Of a DNA stretch of 64,000 nt, positions 41,423-63,612 are shown one piece after another. Position 1 is the stretch's first letter. The number at the start of each line of letters is the position of its first letter. Where the stretch lies: positions 1-64,000 of the IMG/VR virus record IMGVR_UViG_3300044625_001067. One strand, written 5' to 3'. A program made the position numbers and the translations under genes. The notes below the pieces were generated by a model. It saw only the letters and a list, made by a program, of their open reading frames with translations. It was not told the DNA's origin and did no database searches.

Positions 41423-41548
41423 TGACTAAGAGTGTTAGAGGTTAGCATGTTCCTTTGGGCGAAAACAGTAAGATAGAACGAAGGCCAAGTTCCGTATCTG
41501 TGAGTAGTTTTGACAGAGGAGGTTGAGGTTCGAATCCTCGTTAGTCAC
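41423..41548 (+). ncRNA. tRNA-like RNA with ~50-nt hairpin insertion in the anticodon arm (Gln-like)
   Basis: TGACTAA/TTAGTCA acceptor, D arm, TGAGG-TTCGAAT-CCTCG T arm; extended anticodon arm. Confidence 0.7.
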
Positions 41549-41865: not shown

Positions 41866-42097
41866 CTGCTCTAAGGGGCAATCACAGGCAAACGCGAGAG
41901 AAATTATGGACAATAGAGCCCGAGGATTTCTCGGATACTCACCCGGCTCCCCTTCGGGTCCCTTCAAGGGATAATTCCTTAGCCTCATAATGTGAGGGTC
42001 CTTTGGGCAACAGTTTCGATTGATCGTAAACCCTCGTTTGGAAAGTGCGGCGCATAACTAAGTCCGTGCGGAAGACAGCAGTGGGTGACCGTCGAAG

Positions 42098-42177
42098 TTG
42101 AAACGGAGCTGGACGCTCGTACTCGTACAGGATGGCCTCTGTGCGAGCAATGCAGGTTCGATCCCTGCCGTTTTAAT
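42098..42177 (+). ncRNA. D-stemless tRNA-like element with long anticodon-position stem
   Basis: TTGAAACG/CGTTTTAA; GCTCGTAC/GTGCGAGC; GCAGG-TTCGATC-CCTGC. Confidence 0.6.
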
Positions 42178-42244
42178 TGCCCAAGATAAACCCACTGGCT
42201 AACCCTGGTACGGTTAATCGCAAGGCAATCCCTCCGGAGGGGAA

Positions 42245-42309
42245 GGTGCGTGGCTTAGTGGTAAAGCTGGTCCGAAAGGCTGAACGCAGGTTCGATTCCT
42301 GCCGCACCA
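42245..42309 (+). ncRNA. tRNA-like element with GAAA tetraloop replacing the anticodon loop
   Basis: GGTGCG/CGCACC; canonical D arm GCTT-AGTGGTA-AAGC; GCAGG-TTCGATT-CCTGC. Confidence 0.7.
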
Positions 42310-42310
42310 C

Positions 42311-55057: not shown

Positions 55058-55147
55058 TTGTCACCGTGGTGGGCCACTCCTGTGTCGTTCACCGGATATG
55101 ACCTGTGGGTGTGTTCTTTAACGAGTTTTCGAGGACTTGAAACTAAG

Positions 55148-55236
55148 TAGGCGTGTAGGGAGTCGAACCCTAACTAGCCGGTAATCTGCCGGAGAGGACT
55201 GTATAAGGGTCCCTGTGCACCGTACACCACACGCCC
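55148..55236 (-). tRNA. tRNA-Ile(TAT) with long variable arm
   Basis: GGGCGTG/CACGCCT; loop CTTATAC; V arm CCGG-CAGATTA-CCGG; TAGGG-TTCGACT-CCCTA. Confidence 0.8.
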
Positions 55237-58574: not shown

Positions 58575-59296
58575 GGTTTGTGAGGGGTTGCTTGGACTGA
58601 AATAACTATACCGCTTTCCTGTCGGAAAGGAAAGGGGGGTGAACCGCCCGAGGAAAACGGTTTACCGCTCTTGGATCGAGCTAGTGAATCGACTCTCTAG
58701 CTCAGCGGCAATACCAAGGAGGGACTCACGGACGGAGTCGTTCCTTGCTTCTAGACCATTGTCCCACTCAACGTGCCCGGTGAAAGACGCGTAGTCCTCG
58801 GGAACAATCGAGTCAGCAGCAGCGCGAAGAGTGGCTGCTACAATCAGGTCAATTTCGGTCGTAGCTCTGCTCCGATACGCATTGATGGCTTGAGCACGAA
58901 TTGCTTGTGCTTTGGGGGAGAGATTTGTGAGCTGCTCCATTGGACTTTCTCGGCTACCCTATAATCATACCACCTTTCTCTCAGACAGGCAAGGCGGTAA
59001 ACCGCCCTTCCTCTGGGGCTAAGACCCGAACCTCAGTCTCTTTCCCACAATTGAGAGCACCGTTGACTACATTTCACCGGTCTGAGCGGGTAGCTCATTT
59101 TGGTTTTGAACGCATTTCTTTGTACTTCTTCTGCGTTCCTACCTGTAATCACTACTTGGGTCTTGCACAATGCCTCGTTGCCAGATAAAGCGGTGCAAAG
59201 CGCCAAGATCGCAATTGAAACTCTGTTCATTTTTCGTGTGAAAAGGGAAGCGGCGGGACTCGAACCTGAAACCGAGCCTTAGACCTCCGAAGTACC

Positions 59297-59839
59297 TTAA
59301 CTTGCGGGCTTTTCCGGCGAAGAGCCAAGTTCCTGGGATGCGGCTAGATAGTCTTCGATGGCTGCATGAAAGTTGGATTCAAATTCAGCTATCGTTTCGC
59401 CGTGAAACGAGATAATGTCGTCGATGTCTAGGACACGACCAACAATAATCTTGTCTTCAGTATCGAAGACCATACTGGCTGTGTAGTCTTTGTAGGCCAT
59501 GGAATTGATCATGGCTTTCCGCACCCATGTAGAAGAATACGGTTCAGTAAGCATGTACAAACCTTCCTCAAACTTCCCAGTAGAGAGAATGATTTGGAGG
59601 GCTGTTTGAGTTTGTTCGTGAAGTTGCCTGTACTCCTCTTCCTGTGACTCGGTCAATTCTTCTAGGTCTTCTCCAGTCAGAATTTCGTGTATGTCTCCGA
59701 TAACCCAACTGTTACCATACGGTCTTTTCGGGTCTATTTCCGGAGCACCGAATTCACAGTTTCTCCACCCAACGTGCATTCTTCTCAGCAGTTTCAGGTG
59801 GTTTTGAGTTAGGAGAAAGAAGGTCTTGCTGTTAGTCAT
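59297..59839 (-). CDS. phage domain fused to truncated HicB antitoxin domain
   Basis: C-terminal 'YKDYTASMVFDTEDKIIVGRVLDIDDIISFHGETIAEFESNFHAAIEDYL...PEKPAS*' is HicB N-domain-like and ends before the DNA-binding domain. Confidence 0.75.
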   Translation of the reverse strand: MTNSKTFFLLTQNHLKLLRRMHVGWRNCEFGAPEIDPKRPYGNSWVIGDIHEILTGEDLEELTESQEEEYRQLHEQTQTALQIILSTGKFEEGLYMLTEPYSSTWVRKAMINSMAYKDYTASMVFDTEDKIIVGRVLDIDDIISFHGETIAEFESNFHAAIEDYLAASQELGSSPEKPAS

Positions 59840-59853
59840 AACAAAAATGGGAA

Positions 59854-59965
59854 TGGGACCGGCAGGACTCGAACCTGCAACCGCGCCTTTAAAAGAGGTA
59901 ATTTAATTGCTGATGTATCTTTGTCAAGATAACTTTTCGTGCTCTACCAGTTGAGCTACGGTCCC
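59854..59965 (-). tRNA. tRNA-Lys(TTT) with 39-nt insertion in the anticodon stem
   Basis: GGGACCG/CGGTCCC; CG[39 nt]CCT-CTTTTAA-AGGCG; GCAGG-TTCGAGT-CCTGC. Confidence 0.8.
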
Positions 59966-60696
59966 GTATTTGATCCGAAAACTACCTGGAGCGATATTGA
60001 AAGTTTTTTCTCAGCCCCCTGAGCTACTCTCCAATGTTAATGGGTTCAAAGGTTAAGTTAAACCACTCCCCGTCAGAGTTACAGAACAAGAGCTTAGAGT
60101 CGCTATCGTCGGGGTAATACCAGATCAGCATGTTCTTTAACGATTTGTTTTGGGAGTTTTTGGGCAGGGTCTCACCTCGCTTCAGTCGATACAATACGTC
60201 ATGCCCTATCCCTTTACTCGGCACGTCTAACCGTATGCCCTTGTCACCGTCAAAACCTGCTTCAGTGGGTGTCATATCTTTTTGTTAGGTCTACGTTCGC
60301 TTGGCAAATTACTTGGATCGATAATAAAGGTGTTTAGCCCCCAAGTTCTAGAGCCTATATGAGTCCACACAAACATTCAGCATCAACACTTTTCTTTTGG
60401 GCAGGTTTTCACCGGGAAAAGAGTAAGGATGTAACTTCACACCCGTTTGATTTTCAGGGTTAGCATAGAAACAATTGTCATAGTAGTAGCTCGGAAGATC
60501 ATACTCGTCTTCGGGGTCGAGAACTGCTACAATGTCTTCCTTAATGCGAACTCTCCCTTCTACCTTAGTGAGGGGTATGTGATCGGGAGGTAAAGATAAG
60601 AGTACACCAACAACAACTTCCATGTTATCCGGGAAGTCGCTCAGTCTTTCCTTCAGGTCTTTTACTTTCATTCTGTTTACAAAGTCTGAGTTTAAC

Positions 60697-60746
60697 TAGA
60701 TAGTTGTTTTTCCCAAGAGAGTTAGGGTAAATCGCTGAACTATCTA
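60697..60746 (-). ncRNA. hairpin with TCAGC/AAAAACA internal-loop motif
   Basis: TAGATAGT-TCAGCGA...AAAAACA-ACTATCTA. Confidence 0.65.
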
Positions 60747-60764
60747 TGTTTGCCGAAGGCAAAG

Positions 60765-60886
60765 TCGAAGAGGCAAGATTCGAACTTGCGTATGGCGGTT
60801 CCTTTTGCGTATTGGGTAATTGCTGAATTACCTAAGCTAGGTAATCTTTTTGCATTACCACTGCCTAACCACTTGGCTACTCTTCG
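60765..60886 (-). ncRNA. tRNA scaffold whose anticodon loop is replaced by an AAAAAG-hairpin-TCAGCAATT module
   Basis: CGAAGAG/CTCTTCG; GCC-AAGTGGTTA-GGC; GTGGT/ACCGC; GCAAG-TTCGAAT-CTTGC. Confidence 0.8.
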
Positions 60887-61759
60887 GTTTTTCGCACCGC
60901 TTTGCTGGGTGGAGGTTAAGGGGCGAGGAGTGGAACCTTGAGCTCCACATCCGTATCATAGGTTGAGGGTGCTAGGGGTAAACGGACTCAAGCAGAGACC
61001 CTCACTCGGGGCCTATCGCGGGGCACCACTCATATACTCTCGAAAGGCGTTCATAAAGTACCTTACGTCCTCCTCGTAAGATGTGTCAGGGTCGTACCAC
61101 GAGAAGGGGACTTTTTGCGATATCTTCTTGGAGAAAATAAGGTCATACTTGGCTTCATCGGAGAGCTTAGACTCGTAGATTGAGTTGGCCTCCCTGTACA
61201 CTTTGCTTAACTCCTCAAAGCCCTCTACCTCCTCGTTCGAGTCCAAGGCACCTTCATACCACTCTTCGAGGGACTCCACAATTTCTCCAAGCCTTGCGGC
61301 GTAGGTGTGTTGGTCGTCCCTCAGTAAACTGTCACGAAAAAAGCGCAATTGACTCAGGGGTTTGTTAAACTTCCACATTGCTTTAGGGCTAACTGAGAAA
61401 GGAGGTATCCCCGAGAAGATGCTGTATACTGGGGTGTTTTCCATACGTGAACTATAGCGGTTTTGCTGAGCGAAGGAAAGGGTGAAAACCGAACCGCTAG
61501 GGGCGGTTAACCGCCCTGGCTCAAATTTGTTACTCGTCGAGTCCCCTTATACAACTCGATAACTTCACCATCTTCCGACACTCTTACGTCGTAATGGCGG
61601 TACTCGGTTGGTATTTCGTGTCCAACTAAGGGTGTGAAGTCTCTTAGAAAGTTCTCCCAAGAAATAACATTGTCTAGGCCACGACTTCGTAAGTTTTCTA
61701 CAAGACTGTCGTACTCCTCCCGCAAAGAAGAGGAAAAGGGAGCCCACTCGCTATGCGAT

Positions 61760-62137
61760 TCACTTGGTTGACCTTGCATACAAATTCGACAGTAGCAGAA
61801 GCAGAATGAGTGACAAAATGGACACAGAGCCTAAGATTACGATTGGGCTAAACACTGAGAGCCATGGCCAGGTTATTTGCCCCGTTAATTTCAACCCGAG
61901 GAGGAGACCCTGGGCTGTCATTAACGAAACTGCGAGATTCTCAAACATTAGTTATTTCTCATGCGAAAGTAGTTGAAGAATCATCCAAAGGGCTCCCAAC
62001 CCAAGTAGAAAAATTGGCACAAGGGTTGGTGAAAGCACTGTGAGCCAGGGCCAGGAAACCTGACCCGTTACTTTCATAGTCATGAATACGGTTTGCAGAA
62101 CGATGCAGAGGGCACCCGGCAATTTGATCCAGATCAT
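61760..62137 (-). CDS. two tandem paralogous small membrane proteins (61952-62137 and 61760-61948)
   Basis: 'KVTGQVSWPWLTVLSP' vs 'KLTGQITWPWLSVFSP'; first overlaps the DUF2828 stop. Confidence 0.7.
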
Positions 62138-63612
62138 GCTCCTTCAGCAAATACGGCACCGACAGCGTCGTACCTTTCAGTGTAAACAGCGTCACGCATA
62201 GCCCCTACAGGCGTAATTACCCCGCCAGTAAGCACAGCTTTCAGGATTGAAGGGCTGCACCCGGAGACCAGGCAAGTTCCCGTGTCGTGCATTTTCATAG
62301 GTACGTTGCCGCTAGAGTTAACATTCCAGAAGACAAGTTCCGGCAAGGAATACCCAGCTTGAGCGTACTTGATTCGCACCGCCTCAAAGTTTGTCACTGA
62401 GTTGTTTCTGCAGCAGGAATCAAACTGCATGTCTGAGACAATGATGAGCTTGCGCGGCATTTCCCCCTCAGGAATATGGTTCATCGTGGCGGTAGCCAAC
62501 ACAAGATTGAAGACTGCTTGCAGGTCTGTATTCGCACCCCAGTCGGCCCGGCTAAGGTTACGAACACGCTCAGCAACGTTTCTCCCTGTAACCGACTGCA
62601 ACTGCGGTCTTCCGGAGAAGGTTAGGAACTTATCCTTCCATGCCCCGGTGTTACGCTCAGCGATGTACATCGCCAGCGAGATTGAAACCGCCATGGGCAT
62701 GCCGCCGTTATTTCCCATTGATCCTGAGACGTCGGCAATTACCAGGCCGTTCAGCTGCTCTCCTTCCATGTAGTTGGGTAGAGCCTCCCACATTAAGTTT
62801 AGAGTCTGATCGCTCCTCTCACCCCCGTAAAGGTACTTGTGCACGATCTCGTAAGGGTAGATCGTACCGGCATTGATTTTTGCCTCACCTTTCTCTACCG
62901 AGTCAAGGTAGGATTGGTAGCGGTCGCCGTCGCGCTTGGCGAAAGCTTTACGATACATGAAGCCTGCCCGAGAAGGCAACTTGCTATAGTCAATGCTTTC
63001 CCACTCACGGGCACACATTGGCTGCTCAACAATCTTGACTTGTGACCTGAGGGCAGTCAGTGCCTTGCGGTACTGCCTCTCGGTCCAACCCATTGCTTCG
63101 GCAATTTTTCGGCCAATCCTCTTAGAGTCCTGGCTGGAAGCGTTAATGGAAGGCAGCCACTTTGCCAGAAGTGAAACTGACTTTCCAACTTCCGTATTTA
63201 GGTCGGCGTTCAGTTGTGCCTTAATTGCTTCGAGTGCGATGCCCCAAACTAAGGTACCGTCAAGGGCTACCACATCATCCCAGCGACCGTACTGTGGAAT
63301 CAGGCTAACTAGCCTGGCACCAATTGCAGCATCATTTCGAACCAGCTCCTTGAAAACTTCTCGAAAGATCTTTCGCTCTCCCTGGCCCCCACGAATGTCG
63401 CGTGCCCAAAACAAGATTCGAGTTGCGGTCTCAGGGTCTTCTGCGTAGGCAAGGTTGAACAGTCGAGTTGCTTCGCTGATTTTGTCACGGCAAGCTGCAA
63501 TCTTTCCAAAAAGGTCCAGGCACTTAGACTCGGTGGACTTGTATGCCTTTGCACCGTTTGCAGTGGTAGTTTGGTTAAACTCGTTTTCGAGTGCGTTTAA
63601 AAAGGTTGTCAT
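62134..63612 (-). CDS. DUF2828 family protein (TROVE/Ro60-like helical domain + vWA)
   Basis: 'TANGA...ST..CLDLF', 'RDIRGGQGER', 'YGRWDD', 'AKWLPS', MIDAS 'DVSGSM', 'SDMQFD', 'VFWNV', 'VSGCSP'. Confidence 0.88.
   Translation of the reverse strand: MTTFLNALENEFNQTTTANGAKAYKSTESKCLDLFGKIAACRDKISEATRLFNLAYAEDPETATRILFWARDIRGGQGERKIFREVFKELVRNDAAIGARLVSLIPQYGRWDDVVALDGTLVWGIALEAIKAQLNADLNTEVGKSVSLLAKWLPSINASSQDSKRIGRKIAEAMGWTERQYRKALTALRSQVKIVEQPMCAREWESIDYSKLPSRAGFMYRKAFAKRDGDRYQSYLDSVEKGEAKINAGTIYPYEIVHKYLYGGERSDQTLNLMWEALPNYMEGEQLNGLVIADVSGSMGNNGGMPMAVSISLAMYIAERNTGAWKDKFLTFSGRPQLQSVTGRNVAERVRNLSRADWGANTDLQAVFNLVLATATMNHIPEGEMPRKLIIVSDMQFDSCCRNNSVTNFEAVRIKYAQAGYSLPELVFWNVNSSGNVPMKMHDTGTCLVSGCSPSILKAVLTGGVITPVGAMRDAVYTERYDAVGAVFAEGA

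What the first reader, a model, noticed from the sequence alone, without database searches (positions are those of the whole stretch)
60765..60886. tRNA body with the anticodon loop fully replaced by a structured module
Seen: intact acceptor, D and T arms and a GTGGT/ACCGC anticodon stem. The loop is AA-TGC-AAAAAG-ATTACCTA-GCT-TAGGTAAT-TCAGCAATTACCCAATAC-GCA-AAAGGA, with no assignable anticodon. Inference: a non-decoding RNA that uses the tRNA fold for RNase P/Z processing and stability while displaying a binding site, like a natural version of engineered tRNA-scaffold constructs.
Basis: partly seen in the sequence, partly recalled or inferred. Interest (0 to 1): 0.72.

Follow-up and report, generated by a model that had tools for sequence, protein, structure and literature searches.

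The report
Phage tRNA-shaped partner RNA of Ro60-like protein
This is a real, conserved, non-decoding tRNA-shaped RNA gene of a freshwater jumbo phage whose anticodon loop is replaced by a hairpin plus an invariant CAGCAA motif, and it most likely is the RNA partner (a "Y RNA" equivalent) of a divergent Ro60-like protein encoded 1.2 kb upstream, a pairing that recurs in many phages and seems undescribed.

Summary
Window 60765-60886 (-) has intact acceptor, D and T arms and a GUGGU/ACCGC stem. A 57-nt insert stands where the 7-nt anticodon loop should be (Rfam tRNA 41.9 bits).

It is not a one-off. A paralog lies at 59854-59965 (-). A covariance model finds 103 members (90 distinct) in related phage contigs. 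The insert hairpin covaries at 6 of 6 pairs, and ACAGCAA(U) after it is almost invariant.

No conserved anticodon, splicing motif or spliced contig was found.

All members lie beside, and on the same strand as, a DUF2828+DUF7788 gene (window 62134-63612, -). Its predicted structure matches Ro60/TROVE proteins over the full length.

Relatives of that gene without tRNA-embedded RNAs carry stand-alone RNAs instead: a terminal stem plus ACAGCAA. Some of these match the Rfam YrlA tRNA-like core at E about 1e-10.

Best reading: a Y-RNA-like partner of a phage Ro60-like protein in the unpermuted tRNA topology. Binding itself is inferred, not shown. I rate it a new variant of a known kind.

A speculative lead: the same stem+ACAGCAAU module defines Dictyostelium Class I RNAs.

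The parts
60765..60886 (-). tRNA-shaped ncRNA 'B' (122 nt): the finding
   Evidence: Rfam tRNA 41.9 bits with a 57-nt insert. Family model R1 scores 92.4 bits.
60857..60861 (-). 5' strand of the anticodon-position stem (GUGGU). It pairs with 60795-60799 (ACCGC).
   Evidence: Read from the sequence. Orthologs have GCGGU/ACCGC, so the window's U is a G.U wobble at a conserved pair.
60800..60856 (-). 57-nt insert replacing the 7-nt anticodon loop: A-rich linker, hairpin, UCAGCAAU, variable tail, AAAGGA
   Evidence: The same layout occurs in paralog A (AAAAG, N19 hairpin, UCAGCAAUUA, N11-13, AAAGG).
60827..60845 (-). Module hairpin AUUACCUA-GCU-UAGGUAAU
   Evidence: MFE fold. Across the family, all 6 modelled pairs show compensatory changes and 97.4% of cells are paired, against about 45% in slid controls. 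G.U pairs point to an RNA-level structure on this strand.
60819..60826 (-). Conserved single-stranded motif UCAGCAAU (family consensus aCAGCAAu)
   Evidence: C-A-G-C-A is invariant in the 45-sequence alignment. C 90, A 85, G 90, C 89, A 87, A 86 of 90 distinct sequences.
60773..60789 (-). T arm GCAAG-UUCGAAU-CUUGC
   Evidence: G53, U54, U55, C56, A58 and C61 are invariant in the family.
60749..60763 (-). Small trailer hairpin (UUUGCC-UUC-GGCAAA) directly after the discriminator
   Evidence: Read from the sequence. Similar hairpins follow each family member in L031. Its function was not tested.
60955..60982 (-). Sigma-70-like promoter match (TTTACC-N16-TATGAT) about 70 nt upstream of B
   Evidence: 9 of 12 matches. 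The count is not above shuffles, so this is weak.
59854..59965 (-). Paralog 'A' (112 nt): another tRNA body carrying the same module (hairpin UAUCUU-GACA-AAGAUA, then UCAGCAAUUA)
   Evidence: Rfam tRNA 48.5 bits with a 52-nt insert. R1 scores 90.2 bits.
62134..63612 (-). Ro60-like protein gene (492 aa; DUF2828 + DUF7788/vWA with an intact MIDAS DxSxS motif)
   Evidence: Pfam and PHROG 850 'RNA-binding protein'. AF2 model pLDDT 94.9. The top 13 PDB hits and the top 5 Swiss-Prot hits are all Ro60/TROVE proteins, aligned over the full length. D294, S296 and S298 are invariant.

Best explanation
B (and its paralog A) is a non-decoding, tRNA-derived small RNA that most likely serves as the cognate RNA partner of the phage's Ro60-like protein, that is, a Y-RNA-like RNA.

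The tRNA body (acceptor, D and T arms with all tertiary-contact nucleotides) folds into an L shape with a free acceptor end. It is probably matured like a tRNA and can mimic tRNA towards tRNA-handling proteins. The anticodon end carries, instead of a loop, the probable binding site for the DUF2828/vWA Ro60-like ring encoded 1.25 kb upstream on the same strand: a short helix capped by a loop whose first nucleotide is G, followed by single-stranded ACAGCAAU.

By analogy with Ro60-Y RNA particles, the RNA would tether or gate the ring protein and bring it to tRNA-recognising factors. Possible roles are quality control or repair of the phage's about 55 tRNAs, or sequestering host tRNA-directed enzymes.

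Topologically it is the unpermuted counterpart of bacterial YrlA. In YrlA the tRNA-like domain is circularly permuted and the protein-binding stem holds the RNA ends.

Shown here: the structure, conservation and covariation of the RNA, the Ro60 fold of the neighbouring protein, and the gene-RNA linkage. Inferred: binding, processing and function.
For: 1. Real, selected RNA. Model R1 finds 103 hits (90 distinct) at 47-103 bits, all on the gene's strand. Overall 98.9% of cells are paired and there are 647 double-sided changes against 172 in shuffles. All 6 hairpin pairs are compensatory. U8, G10, A14, G18 and the T-loop are invariant.

2. The module is the most conserved part. ACAGCAA holds in 85-90 of 90 sequences and the first loop nucleotide is G in 88 of 90. 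CAGCA occurs in 79 of 94 insert-bearing tRNA-likes but only 19 of 383 ordinary tRNAs of the same loci.

3. The neighbour is Ro60-like. The AF2 model has pLDDT 94.9. Foldseek's top hits are Thermus phage phiLo Ro60, Xenopus and human Ro60 and D. radiodurans Rsr, over the full length, with TM 0.54-0.59 and probability 1.0. The MIDAS motif is intact. Mycobacteriophage homologs are annotated 'Ro-like RNA binding protein'.

4. Linkage.
- In the own 277-kb genome only A and B score about 90 bits, and both lie 1.2-2.2 kb downstream of the gene, while the main tRNA cluster sits at 121-142 kb.
- In cultured Synechococcus phage B3 the single family member in 245 kb lies 393 nt after the homologous gene.
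- All 79 CAGCA-bearing inserts in 33 of 80 diverse loci are co-oriented with the gene, at a median distance of 637 nt.
- In the other 46 loci there are 85 same-strand against 5 opposite-strand stand-alone 'stem + ACAGCAA' elements. Of these, 57 lie within 600 nt of the gene, and 32 of the 46 loci have at least one.
- In the reverse direction, 17 of 25 pattern-found tRNA-embedded modules have the gene in the fetched flank.

5. Bridge to Y RNAs. Stand-alone ACAGCAA elements with an internal T arm, closed acceptor hairpin and D arm match Rfam YrlA over the full model length: L076, 50.3 bits, E = 8.8e-11 locally. Vetrix gives 21.4 bits. Known YrlA genes lie within 4 kb of Ro60 on the same strand, and YrlA resembles a circularly permuted tRNA (PMC4201824; 10.1101/312249).

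6. tRNA-like 3' end. CCA is encoded after the discriminator in 11 of 90 distinct members, where about 1.4 would be expected by chance.
Against: - No binding experiment exists, and the complex prediction was not run by the tool.
- The Ro60-like gene usually sits inside or beside phage tRNA clusters, so part of the proximity could reflect general clustering of tRNA-related genes.
- 14 of 80 loci showed no ACAGCAA element by my criteria.
- At least 3 pattern-found RNAs had 3 kb or more of flank without the gene.
- The motif differs from the GNCGAA motif of canonical YrlA, and Rfam YrlA does not hit A or B themselves.
- Expression evidence is only low-depth metatranscriptome contigs, which may contain DNA.
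Confidence: 0.65

Rival explanations
1. An intron-containing tRNA gene. The 50-nt insert would be removed by a host or phage enzyme to give a normal decoding tRNA.
For: The insert sits in the anticodon region, where tRNA introns usually lie. ARAGORN's intron mode calls it tRNA-Leu(cag) with a 29-nt intron. The same genome has other insert-bearing tRNAs, including one with a 709-nt insert.
Against: - No register gives a U33-NNN-R37 loop.
- The 'anticodons' that ARAGORN assigns to orthologs disagree.
- The insert is more conserved than the flanking stem, which varies from 2 to 7 bp.
- I found no bulge-helix-bulge motif by inspection.
- 50 nt is too short for a group I or II intron, and no Rfam intron or ribozyme matches at E <= 10.
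- The same module exists outside tRNA bodies, as stand-alone RNAs.
- Metatranscriptome contigs span B and A unspliced, with no joint inside them.
- The phage already encodes ordinary tRNAs for all 20 amino acids.
Confidence: 0.04
2. A functional tRNA mimic whose module binds something other than the Ro60-like protein, or acts by base pairing. Examples: a decoy or inhibitor for host tRNA-targeting defence nucleases or tRNA-modifying enzymes, or a regulatory sRNA. The Ro60-like gene would be only a neighbour within a tRNA-metabolism gene cluster.
For: The conservation and covariation do not say which partner is bound. DUF2828 genes sit in tRNA clusters anyway. Some module RNAs lack the gene in their flank. 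In Dictyostelium, RNAs with the same motif were reported to bind an RRM protein directly (PMC7919456).
Against: The module RNAs are the elements closest to the gene, and they switch sides together with it: downstream in L042-L052, upstream in L092-L115. The module follows the gene across three RNA topologies and down to 40% protein identity. One genome-wide hit next to the gene in phage B3 is hard to explain by loose clustering.
Confidence: 0.22
3. A decaying pseudo-tRNA disrupted by a small insertion or mobile element. GenBank annotation implies this for the homolog in phage B3, labelled 'tRNA-Pseudo-GCA'.
For: The homolog is annotated as tRNA-OTHER/pseudo in MN695334. The RNA cannot decode.
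Against: Selection is evident. There are 90 distinct sequences with compensatory changes in all four helices, invariant tertiary nucleotides and an invariant motif. Several paralogs per genome keep the same architecture.
Confidence: 0.03
4. A DNA-level signal (promoter, terminator, recombination or homing site) embedded in a tRNA gene.
For: Paralog A contains TTGACA-N16-TAAATT, 10 of 12 matches to the sigma-70 consensus.
Against: That promoter match is absent from B and from most members. The hairpin keeps pairing through G.U wobbles, which would be A.C mismatches on the other strand. All 103 hits share one strand with the gene.
Confidence: 0.02

Closest known systems
YrlA / bacterial and phage Y RNA-like RNAs bound by Ro60 (Rsr) (Rfam RF02553; Chen et al. 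2014, PMC4201824; Wang et al. 2018, 10.1101/312249; phiLo Yrl1/2, PMC12135203)
   Same: Encoded within a few kb of, and co-oriented with, a Ro60-fold ring protein with a vWA/MIDAS domain. Modular: one protein-binding helix+motif plus one tRNA-like domain with authentic D/T tertiary nucleotides. No anticodon loop. Several RNAs per locus. Stand-alone relatives in other phages match the YrlA tRNA-like core at 50.3 bits.
   Different: Topology is inverted. Here the RNA ends are in a normal acceptor stem (free, sometimes with encoded CCA) and the module is a capped hairpin at the anticodon end. In YrlA the acceptor stem is a closed loop and the ends form the Ro-binding stem. The conserved motif is ACAGCAAU, not GNCGAA. 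The protein is DUF2828, not Pfam TROVE. Rfam YrlA does not hit A or B. Phage ET08, which has canonical YrlA, has no DUF2828 homolog.
Canonical tRNA (RF00005) and intron-containing pre-tRNAs
   Same: Full cloverleaf body, invariant U8/A14/G18/T-loop nucleotides, a discriminator, CCA in some members. Passes the Rfam tRNA gathering score.
   Different: No anticodon loop and no conserved anticodon. The insert is conserved rather than the exon-like flanks. No BHB motif or group I core.
Engineered tRNA-scaffold RNAs (an insert placed in the anticodon stem of a tRNA; recalled from memory: Ponchon and Dardel)
   Same: Same design: a foreign structured RNA replaces the anticodon loop while the tRNA body gives folding and processing signals.
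   Different: This one is natural, conserved and paired with a specific protein gene. The tRNA body here is probably itself functional.
Dictyostelium Class I RNAs (RF01414; Kjellin et al. 2021, PMC7919456)
   Same: A short helix whose sequence varies while pairing is kept, followed after 2-3 nt by ACAGCAAU and A/U-rich sequence. Compare the Rfam consensus ...CCUUACAGCAAUuaAA... with the phage consensus ...cgaACAGCAAUuauuaAA.... The stand-alone phage forms are also about 66 nt, against 42-65 nt.
   Different: These are eukaryotic, with no tRNA body. Only sub-threshold CM hits were seen (20.9 and 16.2 bits against a gathering score of 41.5, in phage Vetrix). There was no hit to A, B or the stand-alone element of this genome. 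Their reported direct binder is an RRM protein. Homology is untested.
tmRNA
   Same: A tRNA-like domain joined to a non-tRNA module. Phage-encoded examples exist, and this genome has a tmRNA-like call at 104340-104723.
   Different: tmRNA lacks a D arm, carries a tag ORF and is far larger. B has no ORF ending in a stop codon.

Membership tests
tRNA (RF00005), decoding | Cloverleaf with acceptor, D and T arms and conserved tertiary nucleotides | tested here: met
   Rfam 41.9 bits against a gathering score of 29. Invariant T8, G10, A14, G18 and T-loop.
tRNA (RF00005), decoding | 7-nt anticodon loop with U33, an anticodon and a purine at 37, conserved among orthologs | tested here: not met
   A 57-nt insert stands in its place, and no register gives U33/R37. 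Ortholog 'anticodons' disagree.
Intron-containing tRNA (archaeal/eukaryal BHB type) | Bulge-helix-bulge motif at the exon-intron junctions, and a mature anticodon arm after excision | tested here: not met
   Inspection of A, B and variants finds no 3-4-3 BHB and no excision that restores a canonical loop. The host appears bacterial: the nearest cultured relative infects Synechococcus.
Intron-containing tRNA (bacterial group I type) | Group I catalytic core (about 200 nt or more; Rfam Intron_gpI) | tested here: not met
   The insert is 50-57 nt. No Rfam intron or ribozyme match at E <= 10.
Intron-containing tRNA (any) | A spliced product exists | tested here: inconclusive
   Four lake metatranscriptomes give contigs spanning B and A unspliced, with no joint inside them. 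These are low-depth contigs, and small RNAs are under-sampled.
YrlA / Y RNA-like (RF02553) | Encoded within about 4 kb of a Ro60 ortholog on the same strand | tested here: met
   B lies 1,248 nt and A 2,169 nt downstream of the Ro60-fold gene on the same strand. The arrangement recurs in relatives. The protein is DUF2828, a structural rather than Pfam-TROVE homolog.
YrlA / Y RNA-like (RF02553) | Contains a tRNA-like domain (T and D arms with tertiary nucleotides) and no anticodon loop | tested here: met
YrlA / Y RNA-like (RF02553) | 5' and 3' ends form the Ro-binding stem, the acceptor-like stem is closed by a loop, and the GNCGAA motif is present | tested here: not met
   The ends of B are in the acceptor stem, the module is a capped hairpin and the motif is CAGCAAU.
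YrlA / Y RNA-like (RF02553) | Scores at or above the Rfam gathering threshold (69 bits) | tested here: not met
   No YrlA hit on A or B at E <= 10. Stand-alone relatives reach 50.3, 36.9 and 32.3 bits.
YrlA / Y RNA-like (RF02553) | Bound by the Ro60 protein | not testable with these tools
This needs EMSA or co-IP.
Ro60/TROVE protein family (for the neighbouring gene) | HEAT-repeat ring plus a C-terminal vWA domain with MIDAS | tested here: met
   AF2 pLDDT 94.9. Full-length Foldseek matches to Ro60 structures with TM 0.54-0.59. DxSxS is invariant.
Ro60/TROVE protein family (for the neighbouring gene) | Matches Pfam TROVE (PF05731) | tested here: not met
   No TROVE hit even at E <= 10. The profile search against PDB sequences gives only E = 1.8 to a TROVE protein.
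Dictyostelium Class I RNA (RF01414) | Short terminal stem plus the adjacent 11-nt motif CCUUACAGCAA, at or above the gathering score of 41.5 bits | tested here: not met
   B has the helix+CAGCAAU arrangement but as a capped hairpin, and gives no CM hit. Stand-alone phage elements reach 20.9 bits at best or do not hit.

The most novel reading that the evidence does not exclude
The helix+ACAGCAAU module may be an ancient, cross-kingdom recognition element for DUF2828-type Ro60-like proteins. It appears in three topologies in phages: minimal RNAs of about 66 nt, YrlA-like permuted tRNA mimics, and full tRNAs with the module in the anticodon arm, such as B. On this reading the abundant Dictyostelium Class I RNAs, reported as unique to dictyostelids and of unknown mechanism, would be the same kind of RNA, that is, Y-RNA equivalents of a DUF2828 protein. 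DUF2828 is known from eukaryotes as well as phages.
Probability: 0.2. Interest if true: 0.85.

Novelty: new variant of a known kind. Interest (0 to 1): 0.72.

Why it matters
Ro60-Y RNA particles are a conserved but poorly understood RNA quality-control system, and how the tRNA-like part of bacterial Y RNAs works is an open question.

This finding suggests a second, large branch of the system. DUF2828-type Ro60-like proteins occur in at least 702 cultured phage records (Felix O1-like, Listeria A511-like, Staphylococcus, Vibrio, Campylobacter, mycobacteriophages, cyanophages). They appear to have their own RNA partners, defined by a simple module: a helix plus ACAGCAAU. No matching model exists in Rfam 15, and I found no description in the paper library I searched.

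The tRNA-embedded form is a natural unpermuted Y RNA with a free acceptor end. That makes it testable whether such RNAs receive CCA, are aminoacylated, or engage tRNA enzymes and defence nucleases.

Several hosts are laboratory strains, so binding, knock-out and structural tests are straightforward. The finding also corrects annotation: these genes are currently labelled pseudo-tRNAs, intron-containing tRNAs, or nothing at all.

Tried and rejected
- **Archaeal-type or group I intron.** No BHB motif, the insert is too short, no Rfam hit, and orthologs have no conserved anticodon.
- **Suppressor tRNA.** I read UCA inside UCAGCAAU as an opal-suppressor anticodon. Rejected because the motif does not sit in a 7-nt loop. 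The longest ORFs do not lengthen when TGA is read through (1591 to 1594 aa), so the code is standard.
- **Removing the 3' AAAGG to restore an anticodon stem.** This works for family A (CGAAA/UUUCG, CUAAA/UUUAG), but the resulting loops still lack U33/R37.
- **Promoter hypothesis.** This applies to A only.
- **C/D-box or snoRNA-like hits.** SNORD59 at 59780-59847 (23.6 bits) and snoU54 are sub-threshold chance matches.
- **blastn of 59000-62000 against cultured phages.** No match.
- **Single-sequence AF2 of the protein.** Useless at pLDDT 39; redone with 104 sequences.
- **Complex prediction of protein + B.** Not folded by the tool, so no evidence either way.
- **GGUAAU/AUUACC long-range pairing seen in B's MFE fold.** Not kept in orthologs (ACUACC variant, uncompensated).
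- **Rfam Dicty_Class_I on this genome's stand-alone element (137.5 kb) and on seven DUF2828 loci.** No hit.
- **Whether Dictyostelium has a DUF2828 protein.** I could not determine this because AFDB organism names are masked.

Full report
**What is there**

The window is the first 64 kb of a 277,244-bp IMG/VR phage record, estimated 98% complete. The genome uses the standard genetic code. It carries about 55 tRNA genes, most of them at 121-142 kb, and a tmRNA-like gene.

On the minus strand, 60765-60886 reads as a tRNA body:
- acceptor CGAAGAG/CUCUUCG
- U8 A9
- D stem GCC/GGC with a GG-containing loop
- stem GUGGU/ACCGC
- variable CAUAC
- T arm GCAAG-UUCGAAU-CUUGC
- discriminator A

A 57-nt insert stands where the 7-nt anticodon loop should be. 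The Rfam tRNA model matches end to end with that insertion (41.9 bits, E = 4.8e-7). The 8-bp hairpin forms in the MFE fold, which is more stable than all 200 shuffles.

**It is one of a family**

A paralog, A (59854-59965, minus strand), has a different tRNA body but the same insert layout: AAAAG, a 19-nt hairpin of different sequence, UCAGCAAUUA, 11-13 nt, then AAAGG.

A pattern scan of IMG/VR recovered A-like and B-like genes in about 14 contigs. These include variants with compensatory changes in the short anticodon-position stem (CG/CG to CU/AG) and in the hairpin (AUUACCUA/UAGGUAAU to AUCACCUA/UAGGUGAU). More distant contigs added further paralog types.

An alignment of 45 diverse members shows these positions invariant: U8, G10, A14, G18, the T-loop, and C-A-G-C-A in the insert.

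A covariance model built from that alignment (R1) finds 103 hits at E <= 1e-6 in 83 sources, 90 of them distinct, all on one strand. On that alignment:
- 98.9% of cells pair.
- 647 cells carry double-sided changes, against 172 in shuffles.
- Slid controls fall to about 45% paired.
- All six hairpin pairs are compensatory, with many G.U pairs, which places the structure in the RNA of this strand.

In the insert, ACAGCAA holds in 85-90 of 90 sequences and the first hairpin-loop base is G in 88 of 90. The flanking anticodon-position stem varies in length and sequence.

**Not a decoding or spliced tRNA**

- No register of B or A gives a loop with U33 and a purine at 37.
- ARAGORN's intron mode assigns orthologs unrelated anticodons.
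- There is no bulge-helix-bulge motif.
- The insert is far too short for a group I intron.
- No Rfam intron or ribozyme matches at E <= 10.
- The same module also occurs outside tRNA bodies (see below).
- Contigs from four lake-water metatranscriptomes cover B and A unspliced. The only joint in the region (60335 to 60681) is a strain variant that replaces ORF 60348-60671. This is weak evidence, because the contigs are low-depth and small RNAs are under-sampled.
- CCA is encoded right after the discriminator in 11 of 90 distinct members, where about 1.4 would be expected by chance. The 3' end therefore behaves like a tRNA end.

**The neighbour**

The 492-aa ORF at 62134-63612 (minus strand) is 1,248 nt upstream of B on the same strand. 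It matches Pfam DUF2828 + DUF7788 and PHROG 850 'RNA-binding protein', but not Pfam TROVE.

With an alignment of 104 homologs, AlphaFold gives a confident model with pLDDT 94.9. Its 13 best PDB matches are all Ro60/TROVE proteins, aligned over their full length at TM 0.54-0.59: Thermus phage phiLo Ro60, Xenopus and human Ro60, and D. radiodurans Rsr. The best Swiss-Prot matches are Ro60 from five species, followed by telomerase p80 and, lower in the list, TEP1. The vWA MIDAS residues are invariant. Mycobacteriophage homologs are annotated 'Ro-like RNA binding protein'. The protein is therefore a divergent Ro60-like ring protein.

**Linkage**

In the own genome only A and B score about 90 bits with R1. 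Other insert-bearing tRNAs reach at most 50 bits and ordinary tRNAs at most 41.

In the cultured Synechococcus phage B3 (protein 62.8% identical), the only family member in 245 kb lies 393 nt after the gene. It is annotated 'tRNA-OTHER / tRNA-Pseudo-GCA'.

In 80 loci fetched with the protein profile (40-97% identity):
- 79 CAGCA-bearing tRNA-likes lie in 33 loci. All are co-oriented with the gene, at a median distance of 637 nt, against 1,944 nt for ordinary tRNAs.
- They sit downstream of the gene in one clade and directly upstream in another.
- The 46 remaining loci hold 85 same-strand and only 5 opposite-strand stand-alone elements: a 7-bp terminal stem, at most 3 nt, then ACAGCAA, with a median length of 66 nt. 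Of these, 57 lie within 600 nt of the gene, and 32 of the 46 loci have at least one.

Together roughly four fifths of the loci have a module RNA beside the gene. In the reverse direction, 17 of 25 pattern-found tRNA-embedded modules have the gene in the fetched flank, and several of the rest are very short loci.

**Bridge to Y RNAs**

Known bacterial and phage Y RNA-like RNAs (YrlA) lie within 4 kb of Ro60 on the same strand. They consist of a Ro-binding terminal stem with a GNCGAA motif plus a tRNA-like domain that resembles a circularly permuted tRNA, with a closed acceptor stem and no anticodon loop (PMC4201824; 10.1101/312249; PMC12135203).

Some stand-alone ACAGCAA elements have the same layout: terminal stem, ACAGCAAU, then T arm, closed acceptor hairpin and D arm. 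The Rfam YrlA model matches them over its full length:
- L076: 50.3 bits, E = 8.8e-11 in a local search.
- L066: 36.9 and 32.3 bits.
- Mycobacteriophage Vetrix: 21.4 bits for the core.

All of these are below the gathering score of 69.

Phage ET08, which carries canonical YrlA, has no DUF2828 homolog. The two protein types therefore appear to have their own RNA types. B and A are the unpermuted version: the RNA ends are in the acceptor stem and the presumed protein-binding module caps the anticodon stem.

**Mechanism (inferred)**

The RNA is probably transcribed with a short leader. A weak promoter match lies at 60982-60955. It is probably processed like a tRNA and receives CCA. The Ro60-like ring would then bind the helix+ACAGCAAU module, leaving the tRNA-shaped end free to engage tRNA-recognising proteins.

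By analogy with Ro60-Y RNA-PNPase particles, the particle could direct RNA quality control or repair towards the phage's large tRNA set. In Listeria phage A511 the homologous gene lies near an RtcB ligase gene. Alternatively it could occupy host tRNA-directed enzymes. None of this was tested, and the complex-prediction tool did not run the protein-RNA job.

**Comparison and novelty**

The finding works like YrlA/Y RNAs but fails two of their defining features, topology/motif and the Rfam score. The protein fails Pfam TROVE while sharing the fold. Rfam 15 has no model for these RNAs. My searches of the paper library found no description of them or of RNA partners for DUF2828 proteins. I rate it a new variant of a known kind.

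**A further lead**

The Rfam model of Dictyostelium Class I RNAs has the consensus terminal stem + CCUUACAGCAAUuaAA. It gave sub-threshold hits (20.9 and 16.2 bits) on the Vetrix elements. Those RNAs are described as a 6-bp stem of variable sequence plus an adjacent, unstructured 11-nt motif. They are 42-65 nt long, are reported as unique to dictyostelids, and their mechanism is unknown (PMC7919456).

The resemblance to the phage stand-alone form is close. However, the CM evidence is weak, other phage elements do not hit, and I could not check whether dictyostelids encode a DUF2828 protein. I give this about a one in five chance.

Noticed in passing
genome (G000) 137540-137600, minus strand; outside the window: A stand-alone element of about 50 nt in the main tRNA cluster, directly after a tRNA-like 3' end. 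It has an 8-bp stem UAGAUGAU/AUCAUCUA enclosing UCAGCAAUUA plus about 23 nt, which is the same module as in A and B without a tRNA body. It gave no Rfam hit.
   Followed up: partly
genome (G000) 191860, 192151, 193329, 193621 and 194542, minus strand; outside the window: Five copies of a repeat of about 75 nt: GGCUGCUGAUUGCC, then a variable hairpin, then (U/C)CCCAGCAAUUCACC. They lie in a 3-kb stretch with few ORFs. This may be another small-RNA array that also carries CAGCAAUU after a hairpin.
   Followed up: partly
window 60893-60913, minus strand: The leader just upstream of B contains CACC-CAGCAAAGC-GGUG, a 4-bp stem around CAGCAAA. This may be chance or a minimal module.
   Followed up: no
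window 41423-41548 (+), 42046-42176 (+), 42244-42310 (+), 55147-55236 (-): More odd tRNA-like genes: a 126-nt one with a 53-nt insert of unrelated sequence, T-arm plus acceptor pairs that tRNA finders do not call, a 67-nt short tRNA, and a 90-nt 'tRNA-Ile(tat)' with an unusual extra arm. None carries the CAGCAA module.
   Followed up: no
genome (G000) 137882-138000, 138412-138570 and 141493-142298, minus strand; outside the window: Three tRNA genes in the main cluster with inserts of different kinds (about 45 nt, about 85 nt and 709 nt). R1 scores the first two below 50 bits, so they are not family members. The 709-nt insert may be a group I intron.
   Followed up: no
window 60336-60680: In three of four lake metatranscriptomes, contigs replace this stretch (ORF 60348-60671, 107 aa) with 18 other letters. 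This is a strain-level indel between B and A, not splicing.
   Followed up: partly
window 59297-59839, minus strand: The ORF directly downstream of A has a C-terminal HicB-like antitoxin domain (PHROG 9151, E = 1.3e-21).
   Followed up: no
L237 (Listeria phage A511, NC_009811.2 19736-29253): The DUF2828 'RNA-binding protein' gp178 lies in a block with tRNA genes, an RtcB-type 'tRNA splicing ligase', a metal-dependent phosphohydrolase and a ribosome-associated inhibitor. This recalls the Salmonella rsr-yrlBA-rtcBA operon. No CAGCAA element was seen by eye in the 660-nt unannotated gap upstream.
   Followed up: partly
L071 8294-8890: A ROOL RNA (Rfam 207.7 bits) lies in the tRNA cluster about 2.8 kb downstream of a DUF2828 gene in another phage contig.
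   Followed up: no
genome (G000) 104340-104723, minus strand; outside the window: ARAGORN calls a permuted tmRNA with the tag ANNIVKFERIAVAV. By my recollection that tag resembles cyanobacterial tags. It fits a cyanobacterial host, as does the nearest cultured relative, Synechococcus phage B3.
   Followed up: no
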